Shown: positions 8,792 through 59,598 of the stretch, piece by piece | Position numbering within the stretch: the stretch's first letter is position 1 | Layout: each line of letters begins with the position of its first letter | Source of the DNA: Convolutriloba macropyga | Lineage: Eukaryota | Direction of reading: 5' to 3' | Assembly: GCF_964194025.1 (NCBI RefSeq) | Contig: NC_134469.1 | Location: 16,616,001-16,680,000 of the forward strand | Length of the DNA stretch: 64,000 bases | Made by a program: the position numbers and the translations under genes | The notes under the pieces: generated by a model | Database searches by the model: none | What the model was told of the DNA's origin: nothing | The model's input: only the letters and a program-made list of their open reading frames with translations

Positions 8792-9026
8792 TCATTTAGA
8801 GTTCAGGCGCCCAACCACATCATGCACCGACACTTTGGTTCCTCTGAACTCAATCATACTTTCGTAGAATCTACAAACAAGTAACGGACATTTGTGATAT
8901 GCCTCCTCTGCTGGTACGAAATCTGCCCAGCAAGATTCCTTCCATTTGATCAACAGTTCCAATCTGCCGCCTGGTCCGCTTGTTGATGCGCCCAGAACTG
9001 CTTCAGCTTCAAGTCCACGCGCGAAC
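8792..9026 (-). CDS. CBX/HP1: HP1/chromobox protein, terminal exon (chromoshadow domain)
   Basis: Acceptor gcag|G at 9027-9028 is phase 2. The spliced sequence RGFARGLEAEAVLGAST...LLIKWK...ADFVPAEEAYHKCPLLVCRFYE matches the HP1 chromoshadow pattern RGFDRGLEPERIIGAT...FLMKWK...EANVKCPQIVIAFYE. Confidence 0.9.
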
Positions 9027-9478
9027 CTGCGCAGGAAACAATCACTTAACATACTCTGACTCTAGCGATCATCTAAATCAGTCCAATATTGCGAACAGCA
9101 CGATACTCTTTTTCCATTTTTTAAACAATAATTAAAAAGCAGGAGTTTACAAAGAGGTTCGCAAGCCTAATAAGAAAGAAAAACGGAGAAAGTATGAAAA
9201 CTGACAACTTAGAATTCAAGTGGATTTAGAATTGTCTCCAAGAGAAATGATTCGTCCATATGCTGAAAAGGAGGGTTGTAGAGATGGAAAAGAAAATTTA
9301 AAAGATGCTTAAAATGAATGCGCGGGACAATATCTGCCCGCGGGACAATCAAATATAATAAAGCACGTTACAGCGTAAAGATAGCAAGTTCGCAAGGGGC
9401 GAAACATCCTATACTAACTAGGCTGGGGGCCAAATCCAATTCGACAATGCTTCGTTTGAGAATTTTAACTTAATGTTT

Positions 9479-12400
9479 AAACAGCTGGCAGATTGCCAGA
9501 AAATAGCCGCAATAGCAGTCCCAAAAAATAGTAAAAGAAACAGACAAAAAATTCTTTTTTATTAAACGTTCAGATAATACAATTTGATTAAGAATCTGTC
9601 TGCTTCTATTTGCTGCTCTCAAACAAGCTTCAATTAGAGTGGCACAAACTCACTTGACCTTTGAATTAAAGTAAGAAAAGTCCATTTTAAAGTGAGGAAG
9701 TCATTTTTGAGAGTGAGGAAAGTCATGCGTGACCAAAAACTTGGCGTCACGCACGCAATTCAGTTGAAATAGCATGAACGAATGAACAAAATGCAGATTT
9801 GAATAAGCTGTGACGTCATATGGCCGTACTAAAAAACTTGACGAAATAAAAAAACATAGCCGGAAGAAATCCGGAAACCACGCACGCAATGGCGTCACGC
9901 ACGCAATTCAGTTGAAATAGCATGAACGAATGAACAAAATGCAAATTTGAATAAGCTGCGACGTCATATGCCCGTACTAAAAAACTTGACGAAATAAAAA
10001 AACATAGCCGGAAGAAATCCGGAAACCACGCACGCAATGGCGTCACGCACGCAATTCAGTTGAAATAGCATGAACGAATGAACAAAATGCAAATTTGAAT
10101 AAGCTGCGACGTCATATGCCCGTAGTAAAAAACTTGACGAAATAAAAAAACATAGCCGGAAGAAATCCGGAAACCACCCAATGACTCGTCTTCGTGAAAC
10201 AATTACCTTTAAATCAACTGGTACCTACTAAAGTGACTACATAAACCAAACAAAAATCAGTAAAAAAACGAAAAAAAGCCCAAAAAACCAACTGAACTAA
10301 AAATTACATTAGTCCTATATATAAAACGAGCCAGCTTTTGAACAAAAAAGAACACATCAGATACGCGCGCAGCAAAAAGTCAAGCCATGTTAAGCTCCCA
10401 AAACTTTCTATTTTTGAAGAAAAATTTGAATACTGCACGAAATTTCCGCAAATCTCTATCAATTCGCGTTATTTCTGTCCATCGAAAAACTATTTTACAA
10501 CATTAAAAAGTAGTTAATTGGTAAGTAAATAAACTTTGCACATTACTTGTCGCTTTAAATCTCAATGAACGCGATAAAACTAAACAATGGCCAAAAAATA
10601 AAATTAAATATTATCATGAAAAAGACTAGAGACAGAACAAAATTCAAACGCAAAAATTGACAAAAAAAGTATTGGCCAATTTTGCACTTGAAACGAGTTA
10701 TTAAGCTTGCAGAAACACGGCTGAAAAGTGTCATCTATATGCGCTAATCTCTCAAAAACTTATAGTCGAAGTTATTCACTGAACGCAGCGCATGAACAAA
10801 AACTTGTCTAGCTCAGAAAAAGTTACTTCACACGAATCTCTGCTCACTTTCACTATTAGGCCGCCTGAACAGATAGTACTTCCTGTAAAAAACCTTAAAA
10901 AACCAATATTCCTCTTCGAGTCGTAAAAAAACAAAACCGACAGATTGCCGGAAAATAGCCGCGATAGACGCTTGTGGCCTTCCATGATTTGAAACAACTA
11001 AAGAAATAAGATAGACAAATCGACAACCAACCCTTTTATAGATCACTAGACTTTTTGGGTTAGATTCAGACTCTCATTTCATGAGACACATACGCCCTAT
11101 AAGGAAAAAACCCTAATAGAACTTTTCAAAATTAATATTTAAAATCAAAAACTCAAGACTCTAATACTCAAGAATTAGGGCATATACGTTTTCCGCTACT
11201 TAGATGCACACTATTGATCTTTAACTAGTAAATGTTCATAAAATTTAAATTTCATAACGCGAGATCAGATGTAAGTCAAATTTTTGAGTGAGGTAAGTCA
11301 TGCAATTGACCTAAAAGCAGAATAAATGAAGAAAGTAAATTCAAAGAAGTCAAATAGTAAGAATCATCGATGGAGACGACGAATTAAAAAAAACATAGCG
11401 GGACAAGTCCTGAACTACAATTCAAACAATTGGGTTAATTTATGAGAATCATTAACTCCGCTTTAAAAAGCAAATGAGAGCTGTGCTGTTAGTAATGAGA
11501 TTAAGCAATAAAACAACACCAGAACAACAAAGACAAGCAAGATTAAAAATTCAACTTTTATTTTAAAAGACAAGATCAACATCAAAAACAACTGCTATGA
11601 ACTCAAACTGCTAAATTCCTCTATTTTTACTTAGCAGACTGTCATTAAATTTCGATGAGTCCTCTCACTGATAATAATAAATAATAAGACAAAAAAACCA
11701 AAAAATGCAAAAAAGTCGCTGAAACTTTTTGAACATTTAGTATAAAAGTCACAGAACGCAACCTCTATTGAAGAATACAATTACCTCAATTATTTGATTC
11801 CCCAATGACCAGAGTTGAGACTTGTCAACAATGGGATTAAGTGATCAGACATCAATAAGTACAACAAATTATATTATTAATTTAAAAAAAAATCAGTACG
11901 ATTTTTCTTTGAAAAAAGGAACAAGCGTATAATTCAGAAAAAAACAAACTGAAATAACTTGCTGTACTTGAAGCGTTTAAAGCAATCAATAAAACCTGTC
12001 GATAATGAGACAAAGTTAAAACGACAAAGTCGAAAAAAAACTTGCAAAAATTAACAAAGTCGATAATTATTATTGAGAGCAATTAGTGTCATAGAAAGCA
12101 CTAATTTTGAACAGAAACGATTAAGTCGATATACTTAACCCCGCTACGCAGAATCAGAGACCTGTCCCCAGATAGATTAAATGATAAGACATCAAAAATT
12201 TCAATAAATGTTGTAGAACTCAAAAATTCACTCAAAATTTTTGAAAAAAGTAGTGTCAAAGTCATGAAAACCACTAGCTGTTAACTCAAACCATTAATTA
12301 GGTTATTTCATGCCTCATTAGCAACCAATCAGACCTGCCACTGATGATACTAAGTGATAAGACAACAGATAATTTTCAAAAAATCGGGCAAAGTCTAAAA

Positions 12401-12901
12401 TTCACTAAAATTTTATGACATCAAATAGTGGCATAGCAAGAAAAAGTTTTAGTTGCCCCATATTGAGTTCAAGCAAAGGCAAATGGGCACAATTAGAACA
12501 CATATGTACCGTCTTAAAAGCGCTGAAGGAGACGAAACTCTGAAAACAGAAGTCAAACTGACGCACCTGAAAAAAAATCCGTCTAAAAAACCGCCAAATT
12601 GTTCGAACACCAATTTCTCACTCGACTTTAAAGGTATTTTGAAAAAAGTCACGCCTCAAACCAACTCGATTTTTTGCTCCCTTTACTATTTCAGTGTGAC
12701 GAAAATCACCACTCTAATTTGACTTCTCACTGACGTGAAAAAACTGAAAAAAGCGAAAGATCTTGAAAAGACAGCACACCAATACAATTCAAATTCTTTG
12801 AACTGTAAAAAACACGATGTCCCCAATAATAGCCGCTATCGCTTCGCGGCTATTAATCAAGAGAAGGCAAATAACACCCCAGCTATCGCTGTGCATCTAT
12901 T
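9479..12901 (-). mobile_element. Nested Helentron-like stack in the last HP1 intron: family 1 > family 3 (10148-10925) plus family 1 (10929-12854) > family 2 (11391-12807)
   Basis: Successive hairpin+subTIR left ends; matching right ends close in reverse order at 12807, 12854 and 12901. Confidence 0.72.
9743..10178. repeat. Tandem repeat, 148-bp unit x3
   Basis: Units start at 9743, 9891 and 10039 (ggcgtcacgcacgcaattcag...). Confidence 0.9.
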
Positions 12902-12921
12902 ACTGAAAAATAACTACATAC

Positions 12922-13325
12922 CCACGAATAGATATGGGTTCAGGCTCAATGACTGCAACAGAATTTGACGACTGCGGAAGATCCTTTGATAAATCTTGGA
13001 AAACGTCGATTCCTTTCCTAGATGGAGACGAAACTCGTGGACCACTCTTTGACTCAGCTGTCTGCAATTCGTCTGAGCTCGCACTTACACTACTGGAGTC
13101 GCTGGGCTTATACACCCTAGAAAGGTTTAAAACCTTAGCTGGACTCACTGTTGTCGGCTTCGGACTTGGGCTCTTCTTTTTAGGACTCGATTCTCGGGAG
13201 TTGGGAGTTCCTGGTCTGCTGGGCTTCTTAATTGGCGAGAAAACGTGTCGCTGCGAAATGTCAGTTTCCATTTTTTCACGCATCTTTCGAAGATTTTTTG
13301 CGCTCATCTGCTTGCTTGGATCCTT
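12922..13325 (-). CDS. CBX/HP1: HP1 hinge exon, duplicate copy B (404 nt; phase 0 in, phase 2 out)
   Basis: Acceptor tttag at 13326-13327 and donor gtatgt at 12916-12921. Encodes S/P/K-rich KDPSKQMSAKNL...EPEPISIRG, which joins in frame to the chromoshadow exon. Identical protein to 15345-15748. Confidence 0.75.
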
Positions 13326-15344
13326 CTAAATAAAAGAATTACAAATAATTTTCGCATCACACGAAAGAACATAAAATATTAACCACATCCAGCGGACGGT
13401 GTATAGCTGAACTCTTAGAACCGCGAGATCTGCATAGCCCCGATTGAAGCACACCCGAAAAGCCCTCCGCCCGAAAACATACAAAATTCTCACAAAAAAA
13501 AACAAACACGTCTCTGAGAAACGAACATTTTCCACTGTTTTTCTTATTTTAATCAAAGTCGAATTTTATTAAATAGTTCTCAAGCATTCATGACTTTAAT
13601 TAGTAAATGTTCATAGTTCTTTAATTAGTAAATTAGTAATCTTTAACTAGTAAATGTTCATAAAATTTAAATTTCATAACGCGAGATCAGATGTAAGTCA
13701 AATTTTTGAGTGAGGTAAGTCATGCAGTTGACCTAAAAGCAGAATAAATGAAGAAAGTAAATTCAAAGAAGTCAAATAGTAAGAATCATCGATGGAGACG
13801 ACGAATTAAAAAAAAACATAGCGGGACAAGTCCTGAACTACAATTCAAACAATTGGGTTAATTTATGAGAATCATTAACTCCGCTTTAAAAAGCAAATGA
13901 GAGCTGTGCTGTTAGTAATGAGATTAAGCAATAAAACAACACCAGAACAACAAAGACAAGCAAGATTAAAAATTCAACTTTTATTTTAAAAGACAAGATC
14001 AACATCAAAAACAACTGCTATGAACTCAAACTGCTAAATTCCTCTATTTTTACTTAGCAGACTGTCATTAAATTTCGATGAGTCCTCTCACTGATAATAA
14101 TAAATAATAAGACAAAAAAACCAAAAAATGCAAAAAAGTCGCTGAAACTTTTTGAACATTTAGTATAAAAGTCACAGAACGCAACCTCTATTGAAGAATA
14201 CAATTACCTCAATTATTTGATTCCCCAATGACCAGAGTTGAGACTTGTCAACAATGGGATTAAGTGATCAGACATCAATAAGTACAACAAATTATATTAT
14301 TAATTTAAAAAAAAATCAGTACGATTTTTCTTTGAAAAAAGGAACAAGCGTATAATTCAGAAAAAAACAAACTGAAATAACTTGCTGTACTTGAAGCGTT
14401 TAAAGCAATCAATAAAACCTGTCGATAATGAGACAAAGTTAAAACGACAAAGTCGAAAAAAAACTTGCAAAAATTAACAAAGTCGATAATTATTATTGAG
14501 AGCAATTAGTGTCATAGAAAGCACTAATTTTGAACAGAAACGATTAAGTCGATATACTTAACCCCGCTACGCAGAATCAGAGACCTGTCCCCAGATAGAT
14601 TAAATGATAAGACATCAAAAATTTTAATAAATGTTGTAGAACTCAAAAATTCACTCAAAATTTTTGAAAAAAGTAGTGTCAAAGTCATGAAAACCACTAG
14701 CTGTTAACTCAAACCATTAATTAGGTTATTTCATGCCTCATTAGCAACCAATCAGACCTGCCACTGATGATACTAAGTGATAAGACAACAGATAATTTTC
14801 AAAAAATCGGGCAAAGTCTAAAATTCACTAAAATTTTATGACATCAAATAGTGGCATAGCAAGAAAAAGTTTTAGTTGCCCCATATTGAGTTCAAGCAAA
14901 GGCAAATGGGCACAATTAGAACACATATGTACCGTCTTAAAAGCGCTGAAGGAGACGAAACTCTGAAAACAGAAGTCAAACTGACGCACCTGAAAAAAAA
15001 TCCGTCTAAAAAACCGCCAAATTGTTCGAACACCAATTTCTCACTCGACTTTAAAGGTATTTTGAAAAAAGTCACGCCTCAAACCAACTCGATTTTTTGC
15101 TCCCTTTACTATTTCAGTGTGACGAAAATCACCACTCTAATTTGACTTCTCACTGACGTGAAAAAACTGAAAAAAGCGAAAGATCTTGAAAAGACAGCAC
15201 ACCAATACAATTCAAATTCTTTGAACTGTAAAAAACACGATGTCCCCAATAATAGCCGCTATCGCTTCGCGGCTATTAATCAAGAGAAGGCAAATAACAC
15301 CCCAGCTATCGCTGTGCATCTATTACTGAAAAATAACTACATAC

Positions 15345-15748
15345 CCCCGAATAGATATGGGTTCAGGCTCAATGACTGCAACAGAATTTGACGACTGCGG
15401 AAGATCCTTTGATAAATCTTGGAAAACGTCGATTCCTTTCCTAGATGGAGACGAAACTCGTGGACCACTCTTTGACTCAGCTGTCTGCAATTCGTCTGAG
15501 CTCGCACTTACACTACTGGAGTCGCTGGGCTTATACACCCTAGAAAGGTTTAAAACCTTAGCTGGACTCACTGTTGTCGGCTTCGGACTTGGGCTCTTCT
15601 TTTTAGGACTCGATTCTCGGGAGTTGGGAGTTCCTGGTCTGCTGGGCTTCTTAATTGGCGAGAAAACGTGTCGCTGCGAAATGTCAGTTTCCATTTTTTC
15701 ACGCATCTTTCGAAGATTTTTTGCGCTCATCTGCTTGCTTGGATCCTT
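15345..15748 (-). CDS. CBX/HP1: HP1 hinge exon, copy A (404 nt; phase 0 in, phase 2 out)
   Basis: Acceptor at 15749-15750 and donor gtatgt at 15339-15344. Phases fit exon 1 (phase 0) and the terminal exon (phase 2). Confidence 0.8.
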
Positions 15749-18719
15749 CTAAATAAAAGAATTACAAATAATTTTCGCATCACACGAAAGAACATAAAAT
15801 ATTAACCACATCCAGCGGACGGTGTATAGCTGAACTCTTAGAACCGCGAGATCTGCATAGCCCCGATTGAAGCACACCCGAAAAGCCCTCCGCCCGAAAA
15901 CATACAAGATTCTCACAAAAAAAACAAACACGTCTCTGAGAAACGAACATTTTCCACTGTTTTTCTTATTTTAATCAAAGTCGAATTTTATTAAATAGTT
16001 CTCAAGCATTCATGACTTGACAATTGCGCCCACCACTGAGTTTAATGTCCTCCGATGAGCTGAATTCTAATATTAAAATGAACGAAGAAGCTTTGCTAGT
16101 GATGTACCGTATCTGACGAACAATAGTACAGCAGTAACTTACTTAGCTCATCAAATGATGACAAATATCGAATTGCAATCGAAAAAATGTCATTGCGATG
16201 CAAGGGTAGGTGGAGGAGCGTACTTAAACCGGCACGTTTAGTGCAGTAAACTTAGTAGAATCGTGCCATTTTTTTCAAGTCGCCCTGAATAAATAAAAAA
16301 AGAGCAAATTTTCTGATTGATCCACTCCATGATAAGCTTTTGGCAACATTAATTTTTGATTTTTTCTACTCTTTTCAAACTTTTAAACTCTTTTCCTTTT
16401 GTTATTTTTAGGTCCGTTTTAATCAAGGTAATAATGATTGCATCAGAGTAGCAATTGGAATCAAGGAAAAAAAGCTTATTGTTATTTTGAATTTTCTAAT
16501 AAAGCAAAATTTTTGGTCTCTTTAATTAGTATCAATTTTTTGGTTATCATGGCAGTTATTATGGCCTTCTGAAACTGGATTTTCACCTCAGGGGTAAACT
16601 TTATGCAAAACTTTCCAGTAATTTTTGTCCAAATTTTTCAAAGAGTCAGAACTAGAATGTTCAATTTATCTTTCTGTTAGCCTCGAAATCTTTTCTGCAG
16701 TCTCCTGAGTCTAAATAAAATACTTCTGCAAACACTTGGGCTTAAAAAAACTTTTCAGTTTGTTTCATTGTGACTCCTTGTTTAAAAAAACAAGAGTAAA
16801 CAATGGCTTCCTGATTTTTTTTACGTAGACTGCAAACAATAATGTAGGGCTTGTGCCCACAACATTGCCACCGAAAAGACCAGTGGTTATCTTCATTGTA
16901 AATAAGTATTTTCGACAGCCAAAAAATGTCTCACGAAAGTTGCCCAATTGAAATTTCACCGTGGAAGCCATGGCTCAAAGGGAACTGACAAAACACTTTT
17001 TACATCTGAGACGCTAAATTAGGCTATACGGAAAGCGTAGTACTGAAAAACAATCAAACCTATGATCAAACTTGACCTAGTTAATAAAGTTTACCCAAGA
17101 TTCCCTAACAACGCTATGTTAGAAATCGATTGAAAAGCAATAATTCAAAAAATATAAAAAAGACATGAAAAGAAAAATTGCCCTCAAAATTTGACAGTCT
17201 TTGCAAACATTGTTTCCTCGGTATGCTTTAGTTTTTCACAACTACATAAGCCATTTCTTTACAAAACGAAAAGTATGCTGGTGCAAGCCACACACACATT
17301 CGTCTCAAAACCTGGCATCTACAAAAAGCCAAGAAGCAACAAATTTAATAAGCGAACTTAGAAAATCTTCGATAAAACAGAACGTAGCCAGTTTGTTGTC
17401 CCGATAAAAACTATTAGAAAACATATAACAATTTTAGTAGGATTCTAAAGCAAAGCAAGAGAAAGAACAGCAGGAACACAAGTTAAATGGCCGCGTAAAA
17501 AAAATATTTAAAAATCAAAAATGTGTTAAAACTTTTATCTCTGCTTCACTTCAGAACTAATCACTTCATTGCTCAATTTACTGTTCTTGCGTGATTAAAT
17601 TCTCCACTCTAATTTTATCTTTTACTGTCATCAAAAAGTCGATTAATTTAAATAGATTTTAATAAAAGACAGCACCCAATATAAATCAAAACCTAGATAG
17701 CCCCAATGAGATCAATAACACCCTCCATATCACTTCTCGGCTACTATAAAAACGTAATTAATTCGGCTACTATAAACGTAATTAAAAACGTAAAACGTAA
17801 AATTTCTAAAAAAGATTGAAAATCACGTTTAAAATTTCAAAAAACTGAGTTAAATCGACTTAAATCAGCAAAGTGCTGTGAAAGCTGCTGTTCCAAAAAG
17901 TTTTGCTCGACGAAAACCTGTCCTTGTTTTAGTTTGCAAAATTGCCTGAGCAGTGCTTTTCAAAATCATTAGTTGTTGCTAAAATAACTGATTTGATTCC
18001 ACTTTTATGGACGGTAAAATTACAGAAAAATCGGCCAAATTTTTTAAAATATCAAACAAAAAGATTCAACAACCCTGACTCATCGTAAAAAAAGCATTAT
18101 TGTCGTTGGGCACATTTTAATGTACTTTAGCAACAGAGAAACAGAATTTGTGCAAAAAATCCAGAAATGTTCCAGAAATTACAAAAATAGTAAAAAAAAA
18201 ATAAGCCACCATGTTGAGTAAAACTGTAAACGGCGATAACTTCCCAAAAAGATGTCAATCGATAAAAGCTCTTTAATAACATATTCAACGATTGACACGC
18301 TTTGTAATGATAATACTCACAACTCTCACAATAATACTCACAACTCTTACAACTCTCACTGATAATACTCACAATTGACCGAAAAGAGCTAGTTTAATTC
18401 CTATCCCCTCCAAGCTGGTTAGAAAAAAAACTTGCTGTTCCCGATATATTAAGGTCTCCGAATTGAGCAAAAACAGCGATCAGCGCAGCTATTAAAAACA
18501 ACAGAGCCGTAACATGATTTTGAGCCATGGGCCTATTGGGTTAGCTACCTAAATTGATGACTTCCCAGCAACTACCTTATTCGTTTTTAGCCTCAGTTTC
18601 TCCGTTACTGAAGATATTGCTGCTCTAGAACCCGTTAACTCCTCTCTGAATGAGCTAAATAGTTTCCTGACCTTAATTTGCAGCGTACTCTCACAGAGAA
18701 AACATGAGCTTCAACTCAC

Positions 18720-19118
18720 GGATGGAATTGATGACGCGAACAGACTTTTTGAAGGGGATTTTTGAGCTTCTAACTTAACCCCAACTTTCAGAGGAGACTT
18801 CTTGGGTTTCTCAACATTAGCTGACTTTGAGGGGCTGTACGAAAAACTCTGGCCTTGGTGATCTTTCTCAAATTGGGCCACCAAATCAGGACAATTCAGA
18901 TTTTTGGCAGGTTCCCAGGTGTTCTCGTTGTCATGATATCCTCGCCACTTGAGTTTATAATGAATTTCACCTGATCTGAGGACACGCTTACTTACAATTT
19001 TTTCCACCACATATTCGGCACAGCCAGATTCCGAACTGACCGCCGTGTCGTTAGCCTTCTCAATTGGGTCACTGCAGCTACTGCTGCTTGACAAGGCCGT
19101 TGGTTTTGAGTGCGGCAT
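18720..19118 (-). CDS. CBX/HP1: HP1/chromobox protein, first coding exon (chromodomain)
   Basis: YVVEKIVSKRVLRSGEIHYKLKWRGYHDNENTWEPAKNLNCPDLVAQFE is a canonical chromodomain with the aromatic cage (Y, W, Y) intact. ATG 19116-19118; donor gtgagt 18714-18719; 133 codons. Confidence 0.92.
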
Positions 19119-19439: not shown

Positions 19440-21682
19440 AACAAACCCGCAGATTGCCCAATACAGCTGAGTGTAATAGAATTTTTGAAATAGAAACAGA
19501 TACATAACGGAGTACATAAACTTATCAATGCCGAGTAAAATAACTATGCAGCATTACTCATAGCAAAATACTGATACTGTCTGCTCTTAGACTTCTCTTT
19601 CAATTGAAATCGAAGTGAGGTCCTTTCGTTGAATGAGGAAAGCCACGCATCAAAAACACCAATATACTTGCGAGGGAGAAAAGAAATGACGTCACGCGCA
19701 CAAACACCAATAATGGGAAGAAGGCTTCTTGAAATTTATAATTTTTCAGATGTTCGGCGTTGAAAAAAACAAACATGAAAAAAGTGTCAGACGACAAAAC
19801 AAGGAAAATGCAGGTCAAGTCCTAACTAATAGAAAAGAAAAAATAAAGGCTTACCAATCAGCAACAATAAAAGAACAGCTCTTAATAGTTAACAAATCGT
19901 ATAACCGTTTAATAGATCACTAGACTTTTTGGGTTAGAATCGGACTCTCATTTCATGAGACACATACGCTCTATAAGGAAAAAACCCTAAAAGAGCTTTT
20001 TCAAAATTAATATTTGAAATCAAAACTCAAGACTCTAATACTCAAGAATTAGGGCATATACGTTTTGCGCTACTTAGATGCACACTATTGATCTTTAACT
20101 AGTAAATGTTCATAAAATATAAAGTTCCAGAAGGTGAGTTCAGAAGTCATTTTTTGAGTGAAGTAAGACACGCAACTGATCTAAAAGCAGAACAAAAGAC
20201 GTCACGTCACGCACACAAAATTTAACTGAAAAGAAGTAAAGTCACTTAAATTGAAAAAGTCAATGTTCGCAAGAATCATCGATGGACACGACGTATTAAT
20301 AAACGAAGCAGCACAAGTCCTGAAACAATACAAAGAATTTGAATGAAAAACTTAGAATTACTCTACCTGACCAGCAGCTCAATTGAACAATACCAGCAAT
20401 AACACGAAATCATCTCAAAAAGTTGAGAAACTAAAACAATCAAACAAAATAAACAAAAATATACTCAATGCTAAAACTCTCTTGAAGCTTTTACCCCGGA
20501 GGCTTTAACCAATTCTGTCTCTGAAATCGTGTGTATTATATCTGAATAGGCCCTTGAAGATCGTTAACTCAGAAAATGACTATTTTTCAAAAAAAAATCG
20601 AATTTTAACGAAATGTTGCCGAAAATCGTGATACTAATATCATCAGAATCATTTCTGTGTCTCTAAAGGCTATCCAGTAACCCAATTCCAAACCATAAAA
20701 AATTCATTGGCTCAAAGACCGATAGCAATAGTTTTTAGAATAAATTTCGAAATATAGAAATACGTTCTATTAAAATGTTGAAAACCATTCCATTGCCCCC
20801 AGCAACTATGTAATAACATACTATCAAACCCAGAAGGAGGTTACCTGGCGACTGAGGCAAAAAAATTGAAAAAAAAGAAAGGTTTTGAAAAATTTGAAAT
20901 CTTAAATTGTTGAAAACAACTCCATTGACACTAACAACCATGCATCAACTTTTTTTATCAGACAATGTAACAGGTTTTCTCGCCCTTGAGACTGGACAAA
21001 TATTGAAAACTGACACAAATTTCAGGAAAACTTAAAAATTGCAGATTTAATGAACAAAAAATGCTAAAACTCGAGACATTGAGATGTTGAAAACCATTCG
21101 ATTGTTACTAGAAACTGCGCATTGCCCTATTATTAAACCTTAGATGAAATTCCCTTGCCCCTGACTCTGGAAAAATTGAAAAAAGAAAAAATTTTCAAAA
21201 CTTGAAAAACTGCAAAAATTATTATCAATTTGCGTGTTTGTGTTTGTAGTACCAAAACATATAGCTCAAAATGGTCATAACAAATAATTTTGTCTCGCAA
21301 AAGACCTTCATCAACTTTAAAAATTTAAGCCTTAGACTTATTAATAAAAACTCAAAAAAATCACAAAAAACATTTAAAAAAAACCACTATTTTGAGCCCA
21401 AAAATTCCCAAATATTACCTCTTAACCTTAAATTAAGGCAATCTCAGCAGCTGCACCACTCTAAGCACTTGAAGACAACAAAAGCTCACTTTGGGCCTCT
21501 AATGAAACTTAATTCCCGCTGGGTTTGACCTGTTTATCCCGCTTTGAAAGATCAAAGTCATTGAAAAATGTGTGAAAACATCTTTTAAAAAAACACAGCA
21601 CCCCAATACAATTCAAATTCTTTGATGAGTAAAAACCACCATTTTTGTCCCCAATAATAGCCACTATCACTTCAAGGCTATT
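19440..21682 (-). mobile_element. Decayed family-1 elements with nested family 2 (20301-21631)
   Basis: The host body at ~19915-20300 matches 11040-11390, and the insert resembles 54004-55447. The termini tacaattcaaattctttg and aatagccactatcacttcaaggctatt are stacked. Left boundary is approximate. Confidence 0.62.
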
Positions 21683-25944: not shown

Positions 25945-27016
25945 AAACATACCCGGCAGATTGCCGGAAAATAGCCGCCGTTGATTCCAATAAGCATGAT
26001 TGGGATTGAAAGAAGAGAAGATATTGAAAAAAAAATTTTTGTACAAAAACATTTTTTAAGTGCGATTTATTTTAATGGCATTTCGTAGTTGAAGATAACG
26101 TACTTCTGTTTCTTAGAGAGAGGCTACAGGGGCTACTATCAATACCAATAAGCATTAGAGATGGTAACTAAGACTTATAGGAACGACGTTCAAATAGCGG
26201 GCATCTAAAATTGGGCTTTATGGGTTTATCCCGTTTCTACTTCTGACTTCAATTTTTATACTGACTCTGTTCATTTTGAATTGCTTTGCTGAGCAACTGA
26301 TGTTCAAAATCACTTTTAGCAGAATGAGAGAAGAGAGAAACTAGTCTAGAGAAGTCAAAAAGATATCACGCAAAATGTTGAAAAAGCGGCAAAATGAGGT
26401 AAAGCGAAAAATTTTTTTATTCGACGAAGTAAAACATACACGGCAGATTGCCGGAAAATAGCCGCCGTTGATTCCAATAAGCATGATTGGGATTGAACGA
26501 ATAGAATATATTGAAAAAAAAAGATTTTTGTACAAAAATATTTTTTAAGTCCGATTTATTTTGATGGCATTTCGTAGTTGAACATACTTCTGTTTCTTCG
26601 AGAGAGGCTACAGGGGCTACTATCAACACCAATAAGCATTAGAGGTGGTAACTAAGACTTATAGGAACGACGTTCAAATAGCGGGCATCTAAAATTGGGC
26701 TTTATGGGTTTATCCCGTTTCTATTTCTGACTTCAATTTTTTATACCGACTCTGTTCATTTTGAATTGCTTTGCTTAGCAACTGATGTTCAAATTCACTT
26801 TTAGCAGAATGAGAGAAGAGAGAAACTAGCCTAGAGAAGTCAAAAAGATTTCACGCAAAATGTCGAAAAAGCGGCAAAATGGTAAAGCGAAAAAAAGTTT
26901 GACGAAGTAAAAAAAAAATACGAGCGCAATAATAGCCGGCTGAGAAGATGAGGGCGGCTATTAAAAAAAAAAATAGGAGCGCTATAATAGCCGGCTGAGA
27001 AGATGAGGCGGCTATT
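25945..27016 (-). mobile_element. Head-to-tail dimer of the same family-1 element with a doubled terminus, in SHMT intron 2
   Basis: Two ~487-bp bodies (starts 25945 and 26432) nearly identical to 56290-56832, followed by two copies of the aatagccggctgagaagatgag(g)gcggctatt end. Confidence 0.85.
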
Positions 27017-27235: not shown

Positions 27236-27647
27236 CTGCAATGATGATTTTGGGTTTGAACAACTTTGCCTGCTCCTCTAATTTGTCATAGTCAATCAGG
27301 CCACTCTCTGGATCCACTTTATACGGCAGGGACTCAAAATAGATAGACGTAGCTGAGATCTTTTTCTTCTCCGTGTAGAACCCGTGTGTCAAGTGGCCAC
27401 CATCGGGAAGATCCAGACCCATAATTCTACCATGAGGTCCTACCAGAGCTGTATACACAGCGAAGTTAGCTGGTGATCCAGAATATGGCTGTACATTGAC
27501 TCCCCAACTGTCGGAGTCCAGTCGATACGCTTCCAGCGCCCTCTTCTGGCAGAGAAGTTCCATTTGGTCAATGAACTTCTGACCTCCATAATATCTGGTT
27601 CCAGGATAGCCTTCTGAGTATCTGTTCTGCATGCAAGATGCCAGCGC
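27236..27647 (-). CDS. SHMT: SHMT exon 2
   Basis: [22 protein letters not shown]...[17 protein letters not shown]...[13 protein letters not shown]. Acceptor tttag 27648-27649, donor 27234-27235; phase 0 to 1. Confidence 0.96.
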
Positions 27648-30600
27648 CTAAATAGTCCTCAATATAATATCCCACTGCTACATCCCGCTACATAGAACTG
27701 CATCTATGTCGCAATGCACTGTAACATTTCATCAGATTTAATCGACCAGAAACTCCAATATCTGTACAACTGTTTCACTCGACTCCACGGGATATCTGTC
27801 GATCTGACTAATGAGAAAACGCGACATGAGAAAACTCTAAAGTAACAGATAGCAGCAAGATTAGACCTCATTTTTTTTTAATGTAAATATATATATTTTC
27901 TGTTCATACGCGTGCCTAATTTTTGATAAACTGAAATCTAAGATGACGTCTATAGACTTCATCTTAGATTTCCGTTGATGAAAAATAAAGCACGCGAATA
28001 AAGAAAAAAAATCTTTAAAAACAGCAGAAATAACGTGACGGACAAATTGCGAAAAAGATACGAAAGGATGAAGAGTTGCTTTTAAGACACCCTGAAAAAA
28101 TGAAAAAGATCTTTAAAATTGACAAAAATTTCCAACAGAAATACTATAAAATAATAAAAAAAACAATAGAAATACTATATAAAATTTCACTTTGATCACA
28201 AGAGTTAAAATTTTACCTTCAACAAGTTTTTTGCAACCCCAATTAAACTAGGGTTTAACGACTGATGGACTAAGGACAGACTTTTTGGGTGATGTATGTC
28301 ATGCGCGATGAAAATGGTTTATCGCTCTAAAGCAAAACCCAGATTTACTCTAAGAATGAATAGAACTTAAGCTCACATTTAAATGATTCAGAAGCCGAAC
28401 TGTCCCAAAAGAATCAACTTTTGACTTGAATTCAAACCATTGGAGACGGCTCAAAATTTTGAACCAAACAAATGGCAAATTTTCCAAAACATCTTCAATT
28501 TCCTTGAATGTCACTGTAAAGAAACTGAAATTCTATAACCACAACCAAATGCTGTATGACGAATTGCTCTCATACCCATACCACTTAACTTACGTGGGAC
28601 TCAAGTGGGAAATTTAGATGTCAAACAAGTTCTTGTTCCAATGATTATCTTGTTTGAATAAATGATAGCAAATTAGTAGTGGCGAAAGGAAAGGAACTAT
28701 AAAGGTTCCCTTACAAATAAAACCAAAATTCTTTCACAATCAAAAAACTATTCAATTGTTCGATTTACAGAAAAGCCTACGCATGGATAAGATGAATTCG
28801 ATTAGCAATTTCAAAATACATAGGTGAAAATTGTGTTCCTAATTTTCGAAAAAAATTATGAACATTTCTATTGAATTCTTCAACCTGACAAACCATAAAC
28901 TCTCTAAGTCTCAAATTTTTCCGTGGTGGATTATAACAGAGGAGGTTATTTCGAACAATCTGATTTCCATCTTTTCTTTTCAATAATGAATTTGGTTGAT
29001 TTGATGTTAATTCGACGGAACCGGTATATTTTTAGGTTTATATATCTCCGCGGTTTTGAAAAAAAAATTGAAATGATTAGTTTTGACAAAATTAGAAATG
29101 TTCGCAAATACAACTCTTAGAAGTTAAAAAGGAGTACATTTTTCCGCTTTTAGTTTTACACTTTGAAAAATGATATTTATTATTTTGAGATCTCGGTCTT
29201 TAAATTGGTGCAGGTCTACTATTTTCCAAAAATCTGTTCAATACAGAGACAGAGACTGATAAGAAAGTATTCTCTAACGAAAGGTTGATAACATTTTCAA
29301 AATTTTTGGTCAAATAGTTCAAACTGTTAAATTTTAAGCTTGAAACTATAAAGAATTAACCGTGACCAATGAAAATCAATTAAACCTAACTAAATATACA
29401 ACAAATTTCTCCGTTCGTTATCTTCAATTGCAACGCGATCTGTCACCCCCCTCCACAAGGAAAAAGTGTTTTTTTTCCACCAACATCCGTAAAAGGTAAT
29501 AAAATTATTTTGAATATTTGTGGGAACCAGTACAAACAAATTTGGCAGATTGCCAGAAAACAGCCGCAAAAGATTTGTAGATCTGCAATCTCAAAAAAAT
29601 ATTCAAAAGAAATTTGTCATTAAATGCTGAGATGTTAAATTTTCATTATAAATCTGTATAACTTATTGCTGCTTCTATTAGCAGCTCTTAAATAACCGCC
29701 AATTTAAGTGACACACACTTGACATTTCATTTCCGAATTAAAGTCAATTTCAGAGTGAGGAAGTCATTTTTGAGAGTGAGGTAAGACACGTGTGACACAA
29801 AACTCATTCACGCGAATGAACAACAAATTGCTCCAATAAGAGTGAAAAATGACGTCATCCACGCAATTCAGTTGGAATTGCATGATGAGCAAAACAGAAC
29901 AAAAGGCAGATTTGAAGTTGTTGACGTCATATGGTCGTAACAAAAATCTTGACCACGAAAAAGAATAGCCGCAAAAATTCCGGAAACGACTCGAAGATTT
30001 GTCTTCGGGGAAAGGTCACCTTTTAAATCAACTGGCACTCTGACTACTAAAAACAAAAAAAAATCAGTCAAAAATGGAGATAGCCAACTGAACTGAACTA
30101 AAAACATCAGTACTCGTATTTATAAAACAAGCGATATTTCTTGGACGCAATTGGTAAATATCGAAGTAGGCGAGCAGCAAAACTAAAGCTAAGTTAGGCT
30201 CCCAAAACTTTATTTTGGAATACTACAAGAATTGACCAAAAAATAGTACAAAAATTATCAATTTCCATGAATTCTCTTAATCGAAACACCATTTTAAAAT
30301 ATAAAAAACAGTATTCAATTGGTAACTACATAAATTTTGTCGCCTTAACTAAAAACATTAGCCGAATCACAATGAACGCGATAAAACCAAAACGACCCGA
30401 AAACAATCAAATCGAAATTAGTCAAGAAAAAGACTAAAGAGACAGAACAATATTAAAACGCAAAAATTCATAAGTTAACAAAACCAAGCCCTAAGAAGAC
30501 GTGCAGAAAAAGTGTTGTTCAAAATTTTACAAAAAAAACAGTAATCAATTGGTAACTAAAAAATCTTTGTCGCCTTAACCAAAAAAATTAGCCGTCGGTT

Positions 30601-33600
30601 TATATCACAATGAACGCGATAAAGATAAACAATGAGCAAAAAATAATCAAATCAAAACTAATCATGAAAGACTAAAAAAGAAAGAACAACATTCAAAAGC
30701 AAAAATTCAGAAGTCACCAAAACCAAGCCCCCCTAAGAAGACGTGCATAAAACGTGTTGTCAAAAGTTTGTGAAAACAAGCTAGCAAAACCTCAGTGCCA
30801 TATGTAAATTTTTTTGTAAATATAACTTTTCTGTTCATTCGCGTGCCTAATTTTCGACAAACTGAAATCTACGATGACGTCTAGAGACTTCAACTTAGAT
30901 TTCCAAAAGCTCCTAGATAAAAAACCATGCGAATGAACAAAATATATTTTCAATAAAAGCAGAAAAAAGGACATATTTAGAAAAAGCTACCAAAGGATGA
31001 AGAGTTACCTTTCAGACACCCTGAAAAAATGAAAAAGACCAAACATTCTGGCAGAGAAGTTCCATTTGGTCAATGAACTTCTGACCTCCATAATATCTGG
31101 TTCCAGGATAGCCTTCTGAGTATCTGTTCTGCATGCAAGATGCCAGCGCCTAAATAGTCCTCAATATAATATCCCACTGCTACATCCCGCTACATAGAAC
31201 TGCATCTATGTCGCAATGCACTGTAACATTTCATCAGATTTAATCGACCAGAAACTCCAATATCTGTACAACTGTTTCACTCGACTCCACGGGATATCTG
31301 TCGATCTGACTAATGAGAAAACGCGACATGAGAAAACTCTAAAGTAACAGATAGCAGCAAGATTAGACCTCATTTTTTTTTAATGTAAATATATATATTT
31401 TCTGTTCATACGCGTGCCTAATTTTTGATAAACTGAAATCTAAGATGACGTCTATAGACTTCATCTTAGATTTCCGTTGATGAAAAATAAAGCACGCGAA
31501 TAAAGAAAAAAAATCTTTAAAAACAGCAGAAATAACGTGACGGACAAATTGCGAAAAAGATACGAAAGGATGAAGAGTTGCTTTTAAGACACCCTGAAAA
31601 AATGAAAAAGATCTTTAAAATTGACAAAAATTTCCAACAGAAATACTATAAAATAATAAAAAAAACAATAGAAATACTATATAAAATTTCACTTTGATCA
31701 CAAGAGTTAAAATTTTACCTTCAACAAGTTTTTTGCAACCCCAATTAAACTAGAGTTTAACGACTGATGGACTAAGGACAGACTTTTTGGGTGATGTATG
31801 TCATGCGCGATGAAAATGGCTTATCGCTCTAAGGCAAAACCCAGATTTACTCTAAGAATGAATAGAATTTAAGCTCACATTTAAATGATTCAGATGCCAA
31901 AATGTCACAAAAGAATCAACCTTTGACTTGAATTCAAACCACGGAAGACGGCTCAAAATTTTGAACGAAACAAATGGCAAATTTTCCAAAACGTCTTCAA
32001 TTTCCTTGAATGTCACTGTAAAGAAACTGAAATTCTATAACCACAACCAAATGCTGTATGACGAATTGCTCTCATACCCATACCACTTTATTTACGTGGG
32101 ACTCAAGCGGGAAATTTAGTTGTCAAACAAGTTCGTGTTCCAATGATTAACTTGTTTTGAATAAAAGATAGCCAATTAGTAGTGGGGAAAGGAAAACTAT
32201 AAAGGTTCCCTCACAAATAAAACTAAATTTGTTTCACAATCAATTGTTCGATTTACAGAAATGCCTACGGCTGGATAACATGAATTCGATGAGCAATTTC
32301 AACACATTGGTGAGAAATTTCTTCCTAATTTTCGAAAAGAATTATGAACATTTGTATTACTTTTTTTAACCTGGCAAACCATAAATTCTATCTCAAATTT
32401 TTCTGTGGTGCATTATACTAGAGGAGGTTAGTTCGAACAATCTGCTCTGACAATATACAGAAAAAATGAAAAAGATTTCAATCTTTTCTTTTCAATAATG
32501 AATTTGGTTGATGTGATGTTCACTCCATGGAACCTGTTTATTGTTAGGTTTATATATATATCCGCGGTTTTGAAAAAACAATGAAACGGTTAGTTTTGAC
32601 AAAATCAGAAGAAATGTTTGCAAAAACAACTCTAGAATTTTGAGCGGAGTACATTTTTCCGCTTTGTTTTACAATTTGAAAAATGATATTTGCTATTTTG
32701 AGAGCTCGGTCTTTAAATTGCTTCCGGTCTACTCTTTTTCAAAACCTGTTTAATACAGAGAAAAATTGGTTCTTATAAAAATTCAATCAGCAGAAAACAG
32801 ACTGATAAGAAAGTATTCTCTAACGAAATGTTGAAACATTTTAGAAACTTTTGGTCAAATAAATCAAACCGTTTGTTATCTTCAAATTCAACACGATCTG
32901 TCACCCCCCTTCACAAGGAAAAAGTGTTTTTTTTCCACCAACATCCGTAAAAGGTAATAAAATTATTTTGAATATTTGAGGGAACCAGTACAAACAAATT
33001 TGGCAGATTGCCAGAAAACAGCCGCAAAGGATTTGTAGATCTGCAATCTCAAAAAAATATTCAAAGAAAAAGACAAAAGAAATTTGTCATTAAATGCTGA
33101 GATGTTAAATTTTCATTATGAATCTGTATCACTTATTGCTGCTTCTATTAGCTTCTCTTAAATAACCTGCAATTAAAGTGACACACACTCACTTGACCTT
33201 TTACTTCGGAATTAAATTTAAAAGTCAATTTCAGACTGAGGAAGCCATTTGACAAAAAACTCATTGACGCGAATGAACAAAAAAACTCGCTGTATTAAGA
33301 GTGAAAATGACGTCAGGCACGCAATGCAGTTGGAATTGCATGATTAACAAAACTGAACAAAAGGCAGATTTTCAGAGGTTGTGACATCATATGGTCGTAA
33401 CAAAAATCTTGACAAAAAACAACAGCCGCACAAATTCCGGAAACGACTCAAAGGTTTGTCTTCGGGAAAAGGTTACCTTTTAAATCAACTGGCACTCTGA
33501 CTACTAAAAACAAAAAAAATAGTCAAAAATGGAGATAGCCCATAAAACCAACTGAACTAAAAACAACAGTACTCGTATTTATAAAACAAGCCAAATTTTT

Positions 33601-34022
33601 TTGGACGGAATTGGTAAATACCGAATTAGGCGAGCAGCAAAACTAAAGCTAAGTTAGGCTCCCAAAACTTTATTTTGGAATACTACAAGAATTGACCAAA
33701 AAATATTACAAAAATTATCAATTTCCATGAATTCTCTTAATCGAAACACCATTTTAAAATATAAAAAACAGTATTCAATTGGTAACTACATAAACTTTGT
33801 CGCCTTAACTAAAAACATTAGCCGAATCACAATGAACGCGATAAAACCAAAACGACCCGAAAACAATCAAATCGAAATTAGTCAAGAAAATGACTAAAGA
33901 GACAGAACAATATTCAAACGCAAAAATTCATAAGTTAACAAAACCAAGCCCTAAGAAGACGTGCAGAAAAAGTGTTGTTCAAAATTTATAAAAGCGAGCT
34001 AGCAAAACCTCAGTGCCATATG
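27544..34022. repeat. Compound tandem duplication in SHMT intron 1
   Basis: Older diverged pair ~27882-30803 / ~30813-34022, plus a recent essentially identical copy of 27544-~28250 at 31046-~31750. Confidence 0.85.
31046..31149 (-). pseudogene. Duplicated 5' part of SHMT exon 2 with its splice acceptor, inside SHMT intron 1
   Basis: Identical by eye to 27544-27647 (offset 3502), including the acceptor and upstream intron; truncated after ...ELLCQ. Confidence 0.9.
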
Positions 34023-56289: not shown

Positions 56290-56832
56290 AACATACCCGG
56301 CAGATTGCCGGAAAATAGCCGCCATTGATTCCAATAAGCATGATTGGGATTGAAAGAATAGAAGATATTGAAAAAAAAAGATTTTTGTACAAAAACATTT
56401 TTTAAGTCCGATTTATTTTGATGGCATTTCGTAGTTGAAGATAACGTACTTCTGTTTCTTAGAGAGAGGCTACATGGGCTACTATCAATACCAATAAGCA
56501 TTAGAGATGGTAACTAAGACTTATAGGAACGACGTTCAAATAGCGGGCATCTAAAATTGGGCTTTATGGGTTTATCCCGTTTCTACTTCTGACTTCAATT
56601 TTTTATACTGACTCTGTTCATTTTGAATTGCTTTGCTGAGCAACTGATGTTCAAAATCACTTTTAGCAGAATGAGAGAAGAGAGAAACTAGTCTAGAGAA
56701 GTCAAAAAGATATCACGCAAAATGTTGAAAAAGCGGCAAAATGAGGTAAAGCGAAAAATTTTTTTATTCGACGAAGTAAAAAAAAAAATAGGAGCGCTAT
56801 AATAGCCGGCTGAGAAGATGAGGCGGCTATTA
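56290..56832 (-). mobile_element. Complete non-autonomous Helentron/HINE-like element, family 1 (~543 bp)
   Basis: On + it starts aaacatac-CCGGCA gat TGCCGG (hairpin)-aa-AATAGCCGC and ends AATAGCCG-gctgagaagatgag-GCGGCTATT (palindromic subTIR). Empty paralogous sites gtcgaaaaaagg at ~59960 and ~61856 show a clean insertion into an A-run with no TSD. Confidence 0.85.
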
Positions 56833-58876: not shown

Positions 58877-58939
58877 AGGTTCCAACCCCCAACTCCCGGC
58901 GTAAGAACCGGTTGCATTAACCACTAGGCTACATGTCCC
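58877..58939 (-). other. Degenerate tRNA-like segment (SINE head or tRNA pseudogene); second copy at 63903-63965
   Basis: The minus strand reads gtagcctagtggttaa (A box) ... ccgg-ttcttacg-ccgg stem-loop ... ggttggaacc (B box with 1 mismatch); the acceptor stem does not pair. Confidence 0.4.
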
Positions 58940-59096
58940 TTATGCTCTCTTTTATTACCAGCACCTTTGTTTTAGCAACAGACATAAATTCTGAATGCGA
59001 GCATTTTAGGTCACGCGAAAAGCGAGAAATCAAGCGTGAAAAAATGACTTAAAACGTGAAGCGAAAGAATGTTCTAGAACAAACTGTAACACAAAA

Positions 59097-59598
59097 AAAC
59101 ATAGCTGGCAGATTGCCAGAAAATAGACACAATAGATTCGTAGATCGGCAGTCTAAAAAAACAGTAAAAAGGACAGACCAAAAAAATGCGTCTCTTCATT
59201 TAAGGCTGATCTCTTATATTTTGATTAAAAATCTGTATAATTTATTGCTGCCTTTATCAGCTGATCTCAATTAACCTTCATTTAGAGTGACACACACCCA
59301 TTTGACCTTATCTCTTTGAATCAAAGTAAATAAAAGTCAATTTCAAAGTGAGGAAGTCATTTTTGAGAGTGAGGTAAGTCAAGTGTGACCAATGTTTAAT
59401 CACGCGAATCAACAAAAAATCTTGCTCAACTAAGAGCGAGAAATGACGTCACGCATGCAATTCAGTTGAAGTTGCATGATGAACGAATGAACAAAAAGTG
59501 GCTGTGACGTCATATGGTCGTAACGAAAATCATGACGACGAATTAAAAAAAACCAAGAGAAGGCCAACAATAGCCCCAGCTATAGCTGTGCGGCTATT
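59097..59598 (-). mobile_element. Un-nested family-1 element (second subfamily, ~500 bp)
   Basis: aaacatag-CTGGCA gat TGCCAG-aaaatag... through aatagccccagctatagctgtgcggctatt. Confidence 0.78.

What the first reader, a model, noticed from the sequence alone, without database searches (positions are those of the whole stretch)
11217..16018. Recent tandem duplication of a frame-shifting HP1 hinge exon: nascent mutually exclusive exons or a chromoshadow-less allele
Seen: both 404-nt exon copies keep intact acceptor and donor sites, and the only exon difference I noticed is synonymous (CGG vs CGT just before the donor). The exon is phase 0 to 2, so only one copy can be included in frame. Including both gives GGA AGG ATC CAA GCA AGC AGA TGA, a ~274-aa chromodomain+hinge product lacking the chromoshadow domain and a likely NMD target. 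Inference: full-length HP1 from this allele requires skipping one copy, so the duplication may lower HP1 dosage in a repeat-rich genome.
Basis: partly seen in the sequence, partly recalled or inferred. Interest (0 to 1): 0.7.

Follow-up and report, generated by a model that had tools for sequence, protein, structure and literature searches.

The report
Heterozygous exon duplication in HP1 gene
One chromosome copy of the sequenced acoel worm carries a real, young 2.4-kb tandem doubling of a frame-shifting middle exon of an HP1-type chromatin gene, an ordinary structural variant that probably weakens that allele while the other chromosome copy stays intact.

Summary
Window 11217-13596 and 13639-16018 are a tandem duplication: period 2422, 4 substitutions and 2 one-base indels, joined by a 42-nt filler. 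Each copy holds a 404-nt hinge exon of a minus-strand HP1-family gene with identical splice sites. The one exonic difference is synonymous (CGT/CGG). Including both copies gives GRIQASR-stop and a 274-aa product.

It is not an assembly artefact. A read-derived contig crosses the junction at about single-haplotype depth, and depth steps down exactly at 16018. A second assembler rebuilt the same structure.

That second assembly also holds the other haplotype (L003, about 95% identical) with one hinge exon and no filler. So the sequenced Convolutriloba macropyga animal is heterozygous. The Hi-C animal probably lacks the duplication.

The filler is a templated copy of sequence beside the left breakpoint, with CTT microhomology, so a repair or replication slip is the likely origin.

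NCBI's 345-aa model and a 2016 transcript-like contig each contain one hinge exon. No RNA from a genotyped carrier was available, so splicing of the duplicated allele is untested.

No RNA-structure, steric or splice-type basis for mutual exclusion was found; only reading frame and NMD remain. The genome has at least 13 chromoshadow loci.

Verdict: a real, ordinary heterozygous variant, probably hypomorphic. The scan has not noted it on other DNA.

The parts
18720..19118 (-). Coding exon 1: start codon, N-terminal tail, chromodomain, start of the hinge. Donor TCC|gtgagt, phase 0.
   Evidence: Pfam Chromo 2e-17. Closest solved chains are CBX5/CBX1, 3e-20, with the Y/W/Y cage kept. Equals residues 1-133 of NCBI XP_075239637.1.
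15345..15748 (-). Hinge exon, upstream copy (B), 404 nt, ends CGG GG|gt.
   Evidence: A transcript-like contig of run X5 lies exactly on 15343-15748.
12922..13325 (-). Hinge exon, downstream copy (A), 404 nt, ends CGT GG|gt. CGT is the state of the unduplicated haplotype.
   Evidence: Equals residues 134-267 of XP_075239637.1.
13304..13306 (-). TGA reached if both hinge copies are spliced in. It lies 22 nt into copy A and about 380 nt upstream of the last exon junction.
   Evidence: (RIQASR*).
8792..9026 (-). Last coding exon: chromoshadow domain and stop. Acceptor cag|GTTCGC. Its first base completes the Gly codon.
   Evidence: Pfam Chromo_shadow 1e-11. Closest solved chain is the CBX1 chromoshadow domain, 9e-13..
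11217..13596 (.). Duplicated unit, copy 1: 1705 nt of downstream intron, the exon, and 271 nt of upstream intron.
13597..13638 (.). 42-nt junction filler, absent from the unduplicated haplotype. Its first 19 nt repeat the sequence next to the left breakpoint.
   Evidence: A 100-nt X2 contig covers 13567-13666 with no mismatch.
13639..16018 (.). Duplicated unit, copy 2.
   Evidence: An X2 contig ends exactly at 16018, and depth drops from 91.5 to 51 there.
18995..18996 (-). Alternative donor ATT|gtaagt inside the chromodomain exon, used by NCBI isoform X2 (253 aa, lacks most of the chromodomain).

Best explanation
This is a genuine, young, heterozygous 2,422-bp intragenic tandem duplication on one haplotype of an HP1-family gene (NCBI LOC142335158) of the acoel Convolutriloba macropyga. 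It arose by a non-homologous repair or replication template switch. The evidence is CTT microhomology and a stuttered, templated 42-nt filler, with the left breakpoint inside a high-copy repeat and the right breakpoint in unique intron. The unit carries the 404-nt hinge exon with both splice sites, so the pre-mRNA of this allele offers two equally good copies 2 kb apart. Inferred: the default outcome is inclusion of both copies, a frameshift, a stop 22 nt into the second copy and decay of the message. Normal 345-aa protein would then come from this allele only when one copy is skipped. On that reading the allele is a hypomorph or null of one HP1 paralogue. It is masked by the intact single-exon allele on the other haplotype and buffered by a large paralogue family, and it is segregating in the laboratory culture.
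For: Structure and frame.

The duplication is real (run X2). A 100-nt contig spans 13567-13666 with no mismatch at depth 43. The unit contig ends exactly at 16018. Unit contigs have depth 75-91 against a flank of 51.

Independent rebuild: contig ctg38033 (L004) of ENA assembly ERZ25071359 is 99.995% identical over 20.4 kb and contains both copies.

Heterozygosity and ancestral state: ctg38029 (L003) of the same assembly is collinear, about 95% identical, and has one hinge exon and no filler. G000 holds no third copy. The genome note reports 3.65% heterozygosity and a purged primary assembly.

Origin: the motif CTTTAAYTAGTAAATGTTCATA occurs at both unit starts and once more straddling the unit end and the filler.

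The gene is live. Splice sites and reading frames are intact in both haplotypes, and coding divergence is well below intron divergence. NCBI's 345-aa model equals exon 1 + one hinge + chromoshadow exon. A 1330-nt X5 contig matches only the exon.

Probably absent from the second animal (run X3). A contig runs through 16018 unbroken and unit depth equals flank depth. Word share is 0.72-0.73 against 0.77.
Against: No RNA from an animal known to carry the duplication was examined, so double inclusion and decay are inferred from general splicing and NMD knowledge, not shown. The EJC-type NMD rule has not been tested in acoels. The X5 transcript-like contig ends the hinge exon with CGG and runs straight into non-intron sequence. 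In genomic data CGG is seen only in copy B, so this might mean that copy B is spliced directly to the last exon, which would be productive skipping. The absence from the Hi-C animal rests on contig topology and depth, not on reads. X2 may be the very reads the assembly was made from, so it rules out an assembler artefact but is not a second individual.
Confidence: 0.65

Rival explanations
1. Newborn mutually exclusive exon pair. The duplicated allele routinely skips one of the two copies, double inclusion is cleared by NMD, and the allele gives near-normal HP1 output. It is then effectively neutral raw material for later divergence of the two hinge exons.
For: Equal length, equal phase and intact sites. 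The frameshift on double inclusion is a recognised way of enforcing exclusivity. The X5 contig joins a CGG-ended hinge exon directly to downstream non-intron sequence, and CGG is otherwise seen only in copy B. NCBI's model has one hinge.
Against: There is no selector/docking complementarity above chance: the longest complement is 13 nt, reached in 25 of 100 shuffles. The intron between the copies is 2019 nt, so there is no steric block. Both copies have identical GT-AG sites. The exons encode the same peptide, so there is no isoform gain. The genotype of X5 is unknown, and that contig also carries two variants of the other haplotype, so CGG may simply be a polymorphism on an unduplicated allele.
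Confidence: 0.25
2. The double-inclusion mRNA is stable and makes a 274-aa chromodomain + hinge protein without a chromoshadow domain. This protein acts on its own, for example as a monomeric H3K9me reader or a competitor of full-length HP1.
For: The reading frame gives that product. The chromodomain cage is intact.
Against: The stop lies about 380 nt upstream of the last exon junction, the classic NMD context. No such protein is on record: the hinge query found only one ORF among 1.84 billion representatives.
Confidence: 0.06
3. Assembly artefact: two haplotypes or overlapping reads were laid side by side, so no molecule carries both copies.
For: The genome is highly heterozygous, and 224 haplotypic duplications had to be removed by curators. 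The library was amplified ultra-low-input.
Against: The other haplotype is about 5% different, whereas the two copies differ by 0.17%. The novel 42-nt filler is present in read-derived contigs at haplotype depth. Copy number steps at the exact boundary. Two assemblers agree. Reads of about 10 kb exceed the 4.8-kb structure.
Confidence: 0.04

Closest known systems
Out-of-frame intragenic tandem exon duplications known as disease alleles (for example single-exon duplications of DMD and BRCA1; from general knowledge)
   Same: A few kb are duplicated, carrying one exon with its splice sites. The exon length is not a multiple of three, so double inclusion shifts the frame. The breakpoints show microhomology and inserted filler.
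   Different: Here the variant sits in an acoel HP1 paralogue, is heterozygous in a culture animal, and has no known phenotype. Its transcripts were not examined.
Mutually exclusive exons born by tandem exon duplication (Kondrashov and Koonin 2001, cited in PMC6071210; Hatje et al., bioRxiv 10.1101/133215)
   Same: Two homologous exons of equal length and phase lie in tandem. Joint inclusion gives a frameshift and premature stop, one of the accepted enforcing mechanisms.
   Different: The copies encode identical peptides. No competing RNA structure, steric limit or U2/U12 incompatibility was found. Exclusive use has not been shown. The variant is polymorphic, not fixed.
HP1 / CBX1-3-5 family (chromodomain, hinge, chromoshadow domain)
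   Same: The chromodomain has an aromatic cage and its best matches are CBX5/CBX1. The chromoshadow domain's best match is CBX1. The order chromodomain, hinge, chromoshadow domain is kept.
   Different: The hinge has no detectable relative outside this species. In the chromoshadow domain the Ile of CBX1's ...VVISFYE is Cys and the Trp of ...ERLTW is Phe. It is one of at least 13 chromoshadow loci and scores ninth among them.

Membership tests
HP1 family | N-terminal chromodomain | tested here: met
   Pfam PF00385, 63 bits against a cut-off of 25. CBX5 3e-20.
HP1 family | Aromatic cage residues for methyl-lysine | tested here: met
   The alignment to CBX5 shows Y (EYVVEK), W (KLKWRG) and Y (GY) at the three cage columns. 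Binding itself was not tested.
HP1 family | C-terminal chromoshadow domain | tested here: met
   Pfam PF01393, 45 bits against a cut-off of 22. CBX1 chromoshadow domain 9e-13.
HP1 family | Chromoshadow dimer and PxVxL-groove residues | tested here: inconclusive
   The alignment puts Cys where CBX1 has the Ile of VVISFYE and Phe where it has the Trp of ERLTW. The consequence is unknown.
Mutually exclusive exon cluster | Tandem homologous exons with the same length, phase and splice sites | tested here: met
   Both exons are 404 nt with identical acceptor and donor contexts.
Mutually exclusive exon cluster | Transcripts contain exactly one of the exons | tested here: inconclusive
   The NCBI model and the X5 contig each have one hinge, but neither is tied to the duplicated allele.
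Mutually exclusive exon cluster | Enforcing mechanism: frameshift and NMD on joint inclusion | tested here: met
   A stop lies 22 nt into the second copy. NMD itself is inferred.
Mutually exclusive exon cluster | Enforcing mechanism: competing RNA structures, steric hindrance or U2/U12 incompatibility | tested here: not met
   The best complement is 13 nt, reached in 25 of 100 shuffles. The intron between the copies is 2019 nt. Both copies have the same GT-AG sites.
Mutually exclusive exon cluster | The exons encode alternative versions of a protein segment | tested here: not met
   The only difference is synonymous.
False duplication in an assembly | No read support for the junction, and depth not raised over the unit | tested here: not met
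   The junction contig has depth 43, the unit 75-91 and the flank 51. A second assembler agrees.

The most novel reading that the evidence does not exclude
The duplicated allele already behaves as an NMD-policed pair of mutually exclusive exons. Carriers make normal 345-aa HP1 from either copy, as hinted by a CGG-ended hinge exon joined directly to the last exon in a 2016 transcript contig. This would be a segregating, dated, naturally marked example (CGG/CGT at donor position -3) of the first step of the Kondrashov-Koonin route to mutually exclusive splicing. It would be open to direct measurement in a culturable animal.
Probability: 0.2. Interest if true: 0.55.

Novelty: new member of a known kind. 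Interest (0 to 1): 0.3.

Why it matters
In itself it is an ordinary heterozygous structural variant in one paralogue of a large gene family, with little expected effect on the animal. Its modest value is as a natural experiment. It is a very young, out-of-frame, single-exon tandem duplication with a built-in synonymous marker at the donor, in a species kept in culture, and non-carrier animals probably live in the same culture. That makes it possible to measure what the spliceosome does with a freshly doubled exon: include both, skip one, and which one. It also allows a test of whether NMD alone yields exclusive use. For users of the reference genome, this locus in the primary assembly shows the derived allele, not the common gene structure.

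Tried and rejected
1. Assembly artefact: rejected on the junction contig, the depth step and the second assembler.

2. Unequal crossing-over between flanking repeats: rejected. Only the left breakpoint lies in a high-copy repeat, the right one lies in single-copy intron, and a non-templated-looking join with filler is present.

3. Docking/selector RNA structures created by the duplication: the one candidate (11934-11954 / 14357-14377 against 16753-16773) is AT-rich, 86% complementary and at chance level. A full RNAduplex scan timed out.

4. Relatives of the hinge exon: the search of 1.84 billion representatives gave only an ORF call on the other haplotype, so nothing can be said about hinge structure in other species.

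5. Exact look-ups of the window's hinge ORF and chromoshadow ORF found nothing. A paper search for the ENA assembly accession found nothing.

6. A joined (spliced) protein model was not built or searched. Exons were searched one by one by reference, and the only full-length sequence used was the database's own XP_075239637.1.

Full report
**What is in the sequence**

A self-comparison shows one long direct repeat: 11217-13596 against 13639-16018. It is 99.75% identical over 2381 columns with a period of 2422. A base-by-base alignment gives four substitutions (11305A/13727G, 12202C/14625T, 12924A/15347C, 13485A/15908G) and two one-base differences in A-runs. Between the copies lie 42 nt (13597-13638) that belong to neither flank. 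The window has no N.

**The gene**

The gene lies on the minus strand.
- An ORF at 18711-19118 carries a chromodomain (Pfam 2e-17).
- An ORF at 8795-9052 carries a chromoshadow domain (1e-11).
- The duplicated ORF between them has no Pfam match.

Reading the minus strand gives this model:
- Exon 1 runs from the ATG at 19118 to 18720, with donor TCC|gtgagt in phase 0.
- The hinge exon is 15748-15345, and again 13325-12922.
- The last exon is 9026-8792, with acceptor cag|G.

With one hinge exon the product is 345 aa.

This was not left as my own model. A cluster look-up returned NCBI XP_075239637.1 (LOC142335158 isoform X1, Convolutriloba macropyga, 345 aa). The three exon translations are found in it at residues 1-133, 134-267 and 269-345, and the split codon gives Gly268.

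I searched the exons one by one by reference. I did not build or search a joined sequence.

The chromodomain is closest to CBX5/CBX1 (3e-20) and keeps the three cage aromatics. The chromoshadow domain is closest to CBX1 (9e-13), but it has Cys and Phe where CBX1 has the Ile of VVISFYE and the Trp of ERLTW.

Every sequence statement checks out.
- Both exon copies are 404 nt with identical acceptor and donor surroundings.
- The only exonic difference is at position 402: CGT in the downstream copy A and CGG in the upstream copy B, both Arg.
- The exon leaves two bases of a codon. A second copy is therefore read as RIQASR then TGA at 13306-13304, which gives 274 aa.
- The stop lies about 380 nt upstream of the last exon junction.

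**Real or artefact**

Logan contigs of four public runs were laid on 10800-16400.

Run X2 gives four pieces of evidence:
- A 100-nt contig covers 13567-13666 without mismatch at depth 43. That is the end of copy 1, the whole filler and the start of copy 2.
- A 696-nt unit contig stops exactly at 16018.
- The next contig starts 30 nt earlier and continues into the flank at depth 51.
- Unit contigs have depth 75-91.

This is the graph expected of a true tandem duplication. The novel filler exists in reads at about one-haplotype depth.

An exact look-up of the window's chromodomain ORF then returned L004, contig ctg38033_62x of ENA assembly ERZ25071359. L004 is 99.995% identical to window 8711-29117 and holds both copies. 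From the contig naming and the 'ENA metagenome assembly' source, I infer that this is a second assembler's build of the same HiFi reads. It is therefore an independent reconstruction, not an independent animal.

The genome note (PMC13650328) identifies G000 as txConMacr16.3. The assembly is 1175.98 Mb, built with hifiasm --primary plus purge_dups from reads of about 10 kb, and heterozygosity is 3.65%. Reads of that length exceed the 4.8-kb structure.

**The other haplotype**

The only hit of the hinge exon among 1.84 billion representative proteins was a 135-aa ORF with one Thr-to-Ala change. Its contig L003 (ctg38029_57x of the same ENA assembly) is collinear with the window from the SHMT gene to beyond the chromoshadow exon. 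It is about 95% identical and has one hinge exon. It reads straight from the unit end into the window's right flank, and from the window's left flank into the unit start, without the filler.

G000 itself has no further copy of the unit. L003 is therefore the purged alternate haplotype, and the sequenced animal is heterozygous: duplicated over unduplicated.

The two copies differ by 0.17% and the haplotypes differ by 5-8% here, so the duplication is far younger than the haplotype split. Using L003 as outgroup, CGT is ancestral and CGG is derived in copy B. 13485A is derived in copy A.

**The second animal**

Run X3 comes from a different sample of the same study. From the yields, I infer that this is the Hi-C specimen txConMacr17.
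- A 1384-nt contig runs from 15323 through 16018 into the flank without a break, at depth 65.6.
- Unit-only contigs have depth 54-65, the same as the flank.
- Both runs of that sample hold 0.72-0.73 of the sampled words against 0.77 for the first sample. The gap is about what loss of the junction plus one copy's private variants would give.

I read this as probable absence of the duplication from that animal, at about three in four. It rests on contigs, not reads.

**How it arose**

The left breakpoint lies inside a high-copy element with word depth of about 1e5. The right breakpoint lies in single-copy intron. Recombination between flanking repeats is therefore excluded.

The 22-nt motif CTTTAAYTAGTAAATGTTCATA occurs at both unit starts (11219, 13641) and at 13594. 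At 13594 its first three bases, CTT, are the last bases of the unit, and the next 19 are the start of the filler. A second partial copy follows.

This is the signature of a microhomology-primed, stuttering template switch, either polymerase-theta-type end joining or replication template switching. It is an inference from the junction anatomy.

**What it does**

It is shown that the allele offers two equivalent exons 2019 nt apart, and that using both shifts the frame.

It is inferred from general knowledge of exon definition and of out-of-frame exon duplications in human genes that both copies will usually be included. The message would then be lost to NMD, leaving a weak or null allele.

Evidence that the gene normally uses one hinge exon:
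- The NCBI model has one.
- A 1330-nt contig of the 2016 run X5 matches the window only over 15343-15748, with 611 and 313 further letters on either side. Those lengths fit exon 1 plus leader, and the last exon plus trailer.
- X5 covers unique intron hardly at all, so it behaves as a transcriptome although it is labelled 'DNA?'.

One detail deserves follow-up. The X5 contig ends the exon with CGG, which in genomic data is seen only in copy B, and goes directly into the next exon. However, it also has the two L003-type variants at 15461 and 15484. It may therefore come from an unduplicated third allele, or be a mosaic of alleles.

**Mutual exclusion**

Accepted enforcing mechanisms are competing RNA structures, steric hindrance, U2/U12 incompatibility, and frameshift with NMD.
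- The best complement between the unit's introns and the introns outside the unit is 13 perfect bases. That was reached in 25 of 100 shuffles.
- The inter-copy intron is long.
- The splice sites are identical.

Only frame and NMD remain. The two exons encode the same peptide, so there is no isoform diversity yet.

**Dosage**

The intact allele on the other haplotype argues against a marked effect on heterochromatin. So do at least 13 chromoshadow-matching loci in the genome, among which this gene ranks ninth by score.

Between haplotypes the coding exons differ at 14 positions in 1038 nt, about half of them synonymous, against roughly 5% in introns. Frames and splice sites are intact in both. 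The gene is therefore under some constraint.

**Limits**

- Each read tool allowed one call, so the project's own RNA-seq run could not be examined.
- The zygosity and the absence from the second animal are read from contig depth and topology.
- NMD rules are assumed for acoels.

**Verdict**

The variant is real, young and heterozygous, and it is of a well-known kind. Its functional reading, hypomorph or nascent exclusive pair, is open. RNA-seq junction counts using the CGG/CGT marker would decide it.

Noticed in passing
window 18995-18996 (minus strand), within exon 1: A consensus donor ATT|gtaagt inside the chromodomain exon is used by NCBI isoform X2 (XP_075239638.1, 253 aa). It joins residue 41 directly to the hinge exon and removes most of the chromodomain, giving a hinge + chromoshadow-only HP1 isoform.
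   Followed up: partly
window 9742-10185: Three tandem copies of a 148-nt unit (94-98% identical) lie in the last intron. In the other haplotype (L003) about 294 nt are missing here, so the array varies in copy number between the two haplotypes.
   Followed up: partly
window 27544-28962 vs 31046-32444, 29411-30534 vs 32869-33993, and 25945-26411 vs 26432-26894: Older local tandem duplications (90-95% identical, periods of about 3.5 kb and 487 nt) lie in and beside the neighbouring SHMT gene. L004 shows two SHMT-matching ORFs. Kilobase-scale tandem duplication seems common in this genome.
   Followed up: no
window 56832-64000: Several 1.6-2.1-kb direct repeats are 99.2-99.4% identical at offsets of 1.9, 3.1 and 5.0 kb.
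   Followed up: no
window 10800-11547, 12670-12856 and their copies at 13605-13978, 15101-15287: Intron segments with summed word depth of 1e5 or more in genomic runs, so very high-copy repeats. One element (11029-11326) recurs at 19903-20196 at 90% identity and contains the left breakpoint of the duplication.
   Followed up: partly
G000, 13 places listed: At least 13 chromoshadow-domain matches above the Pfam cut-off lie on eight chromosome-scale contigs. This is a large HP1 family for an animal. This gene's chromoshadow domain is among the more divergent.
   Followed up: no
whole window: A persistent A-over-T excess on the plus strand (AT skew of +0.1 to +0.3 in nearly every 2-kb bin) at about 35% G+C.
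   Followed up: no
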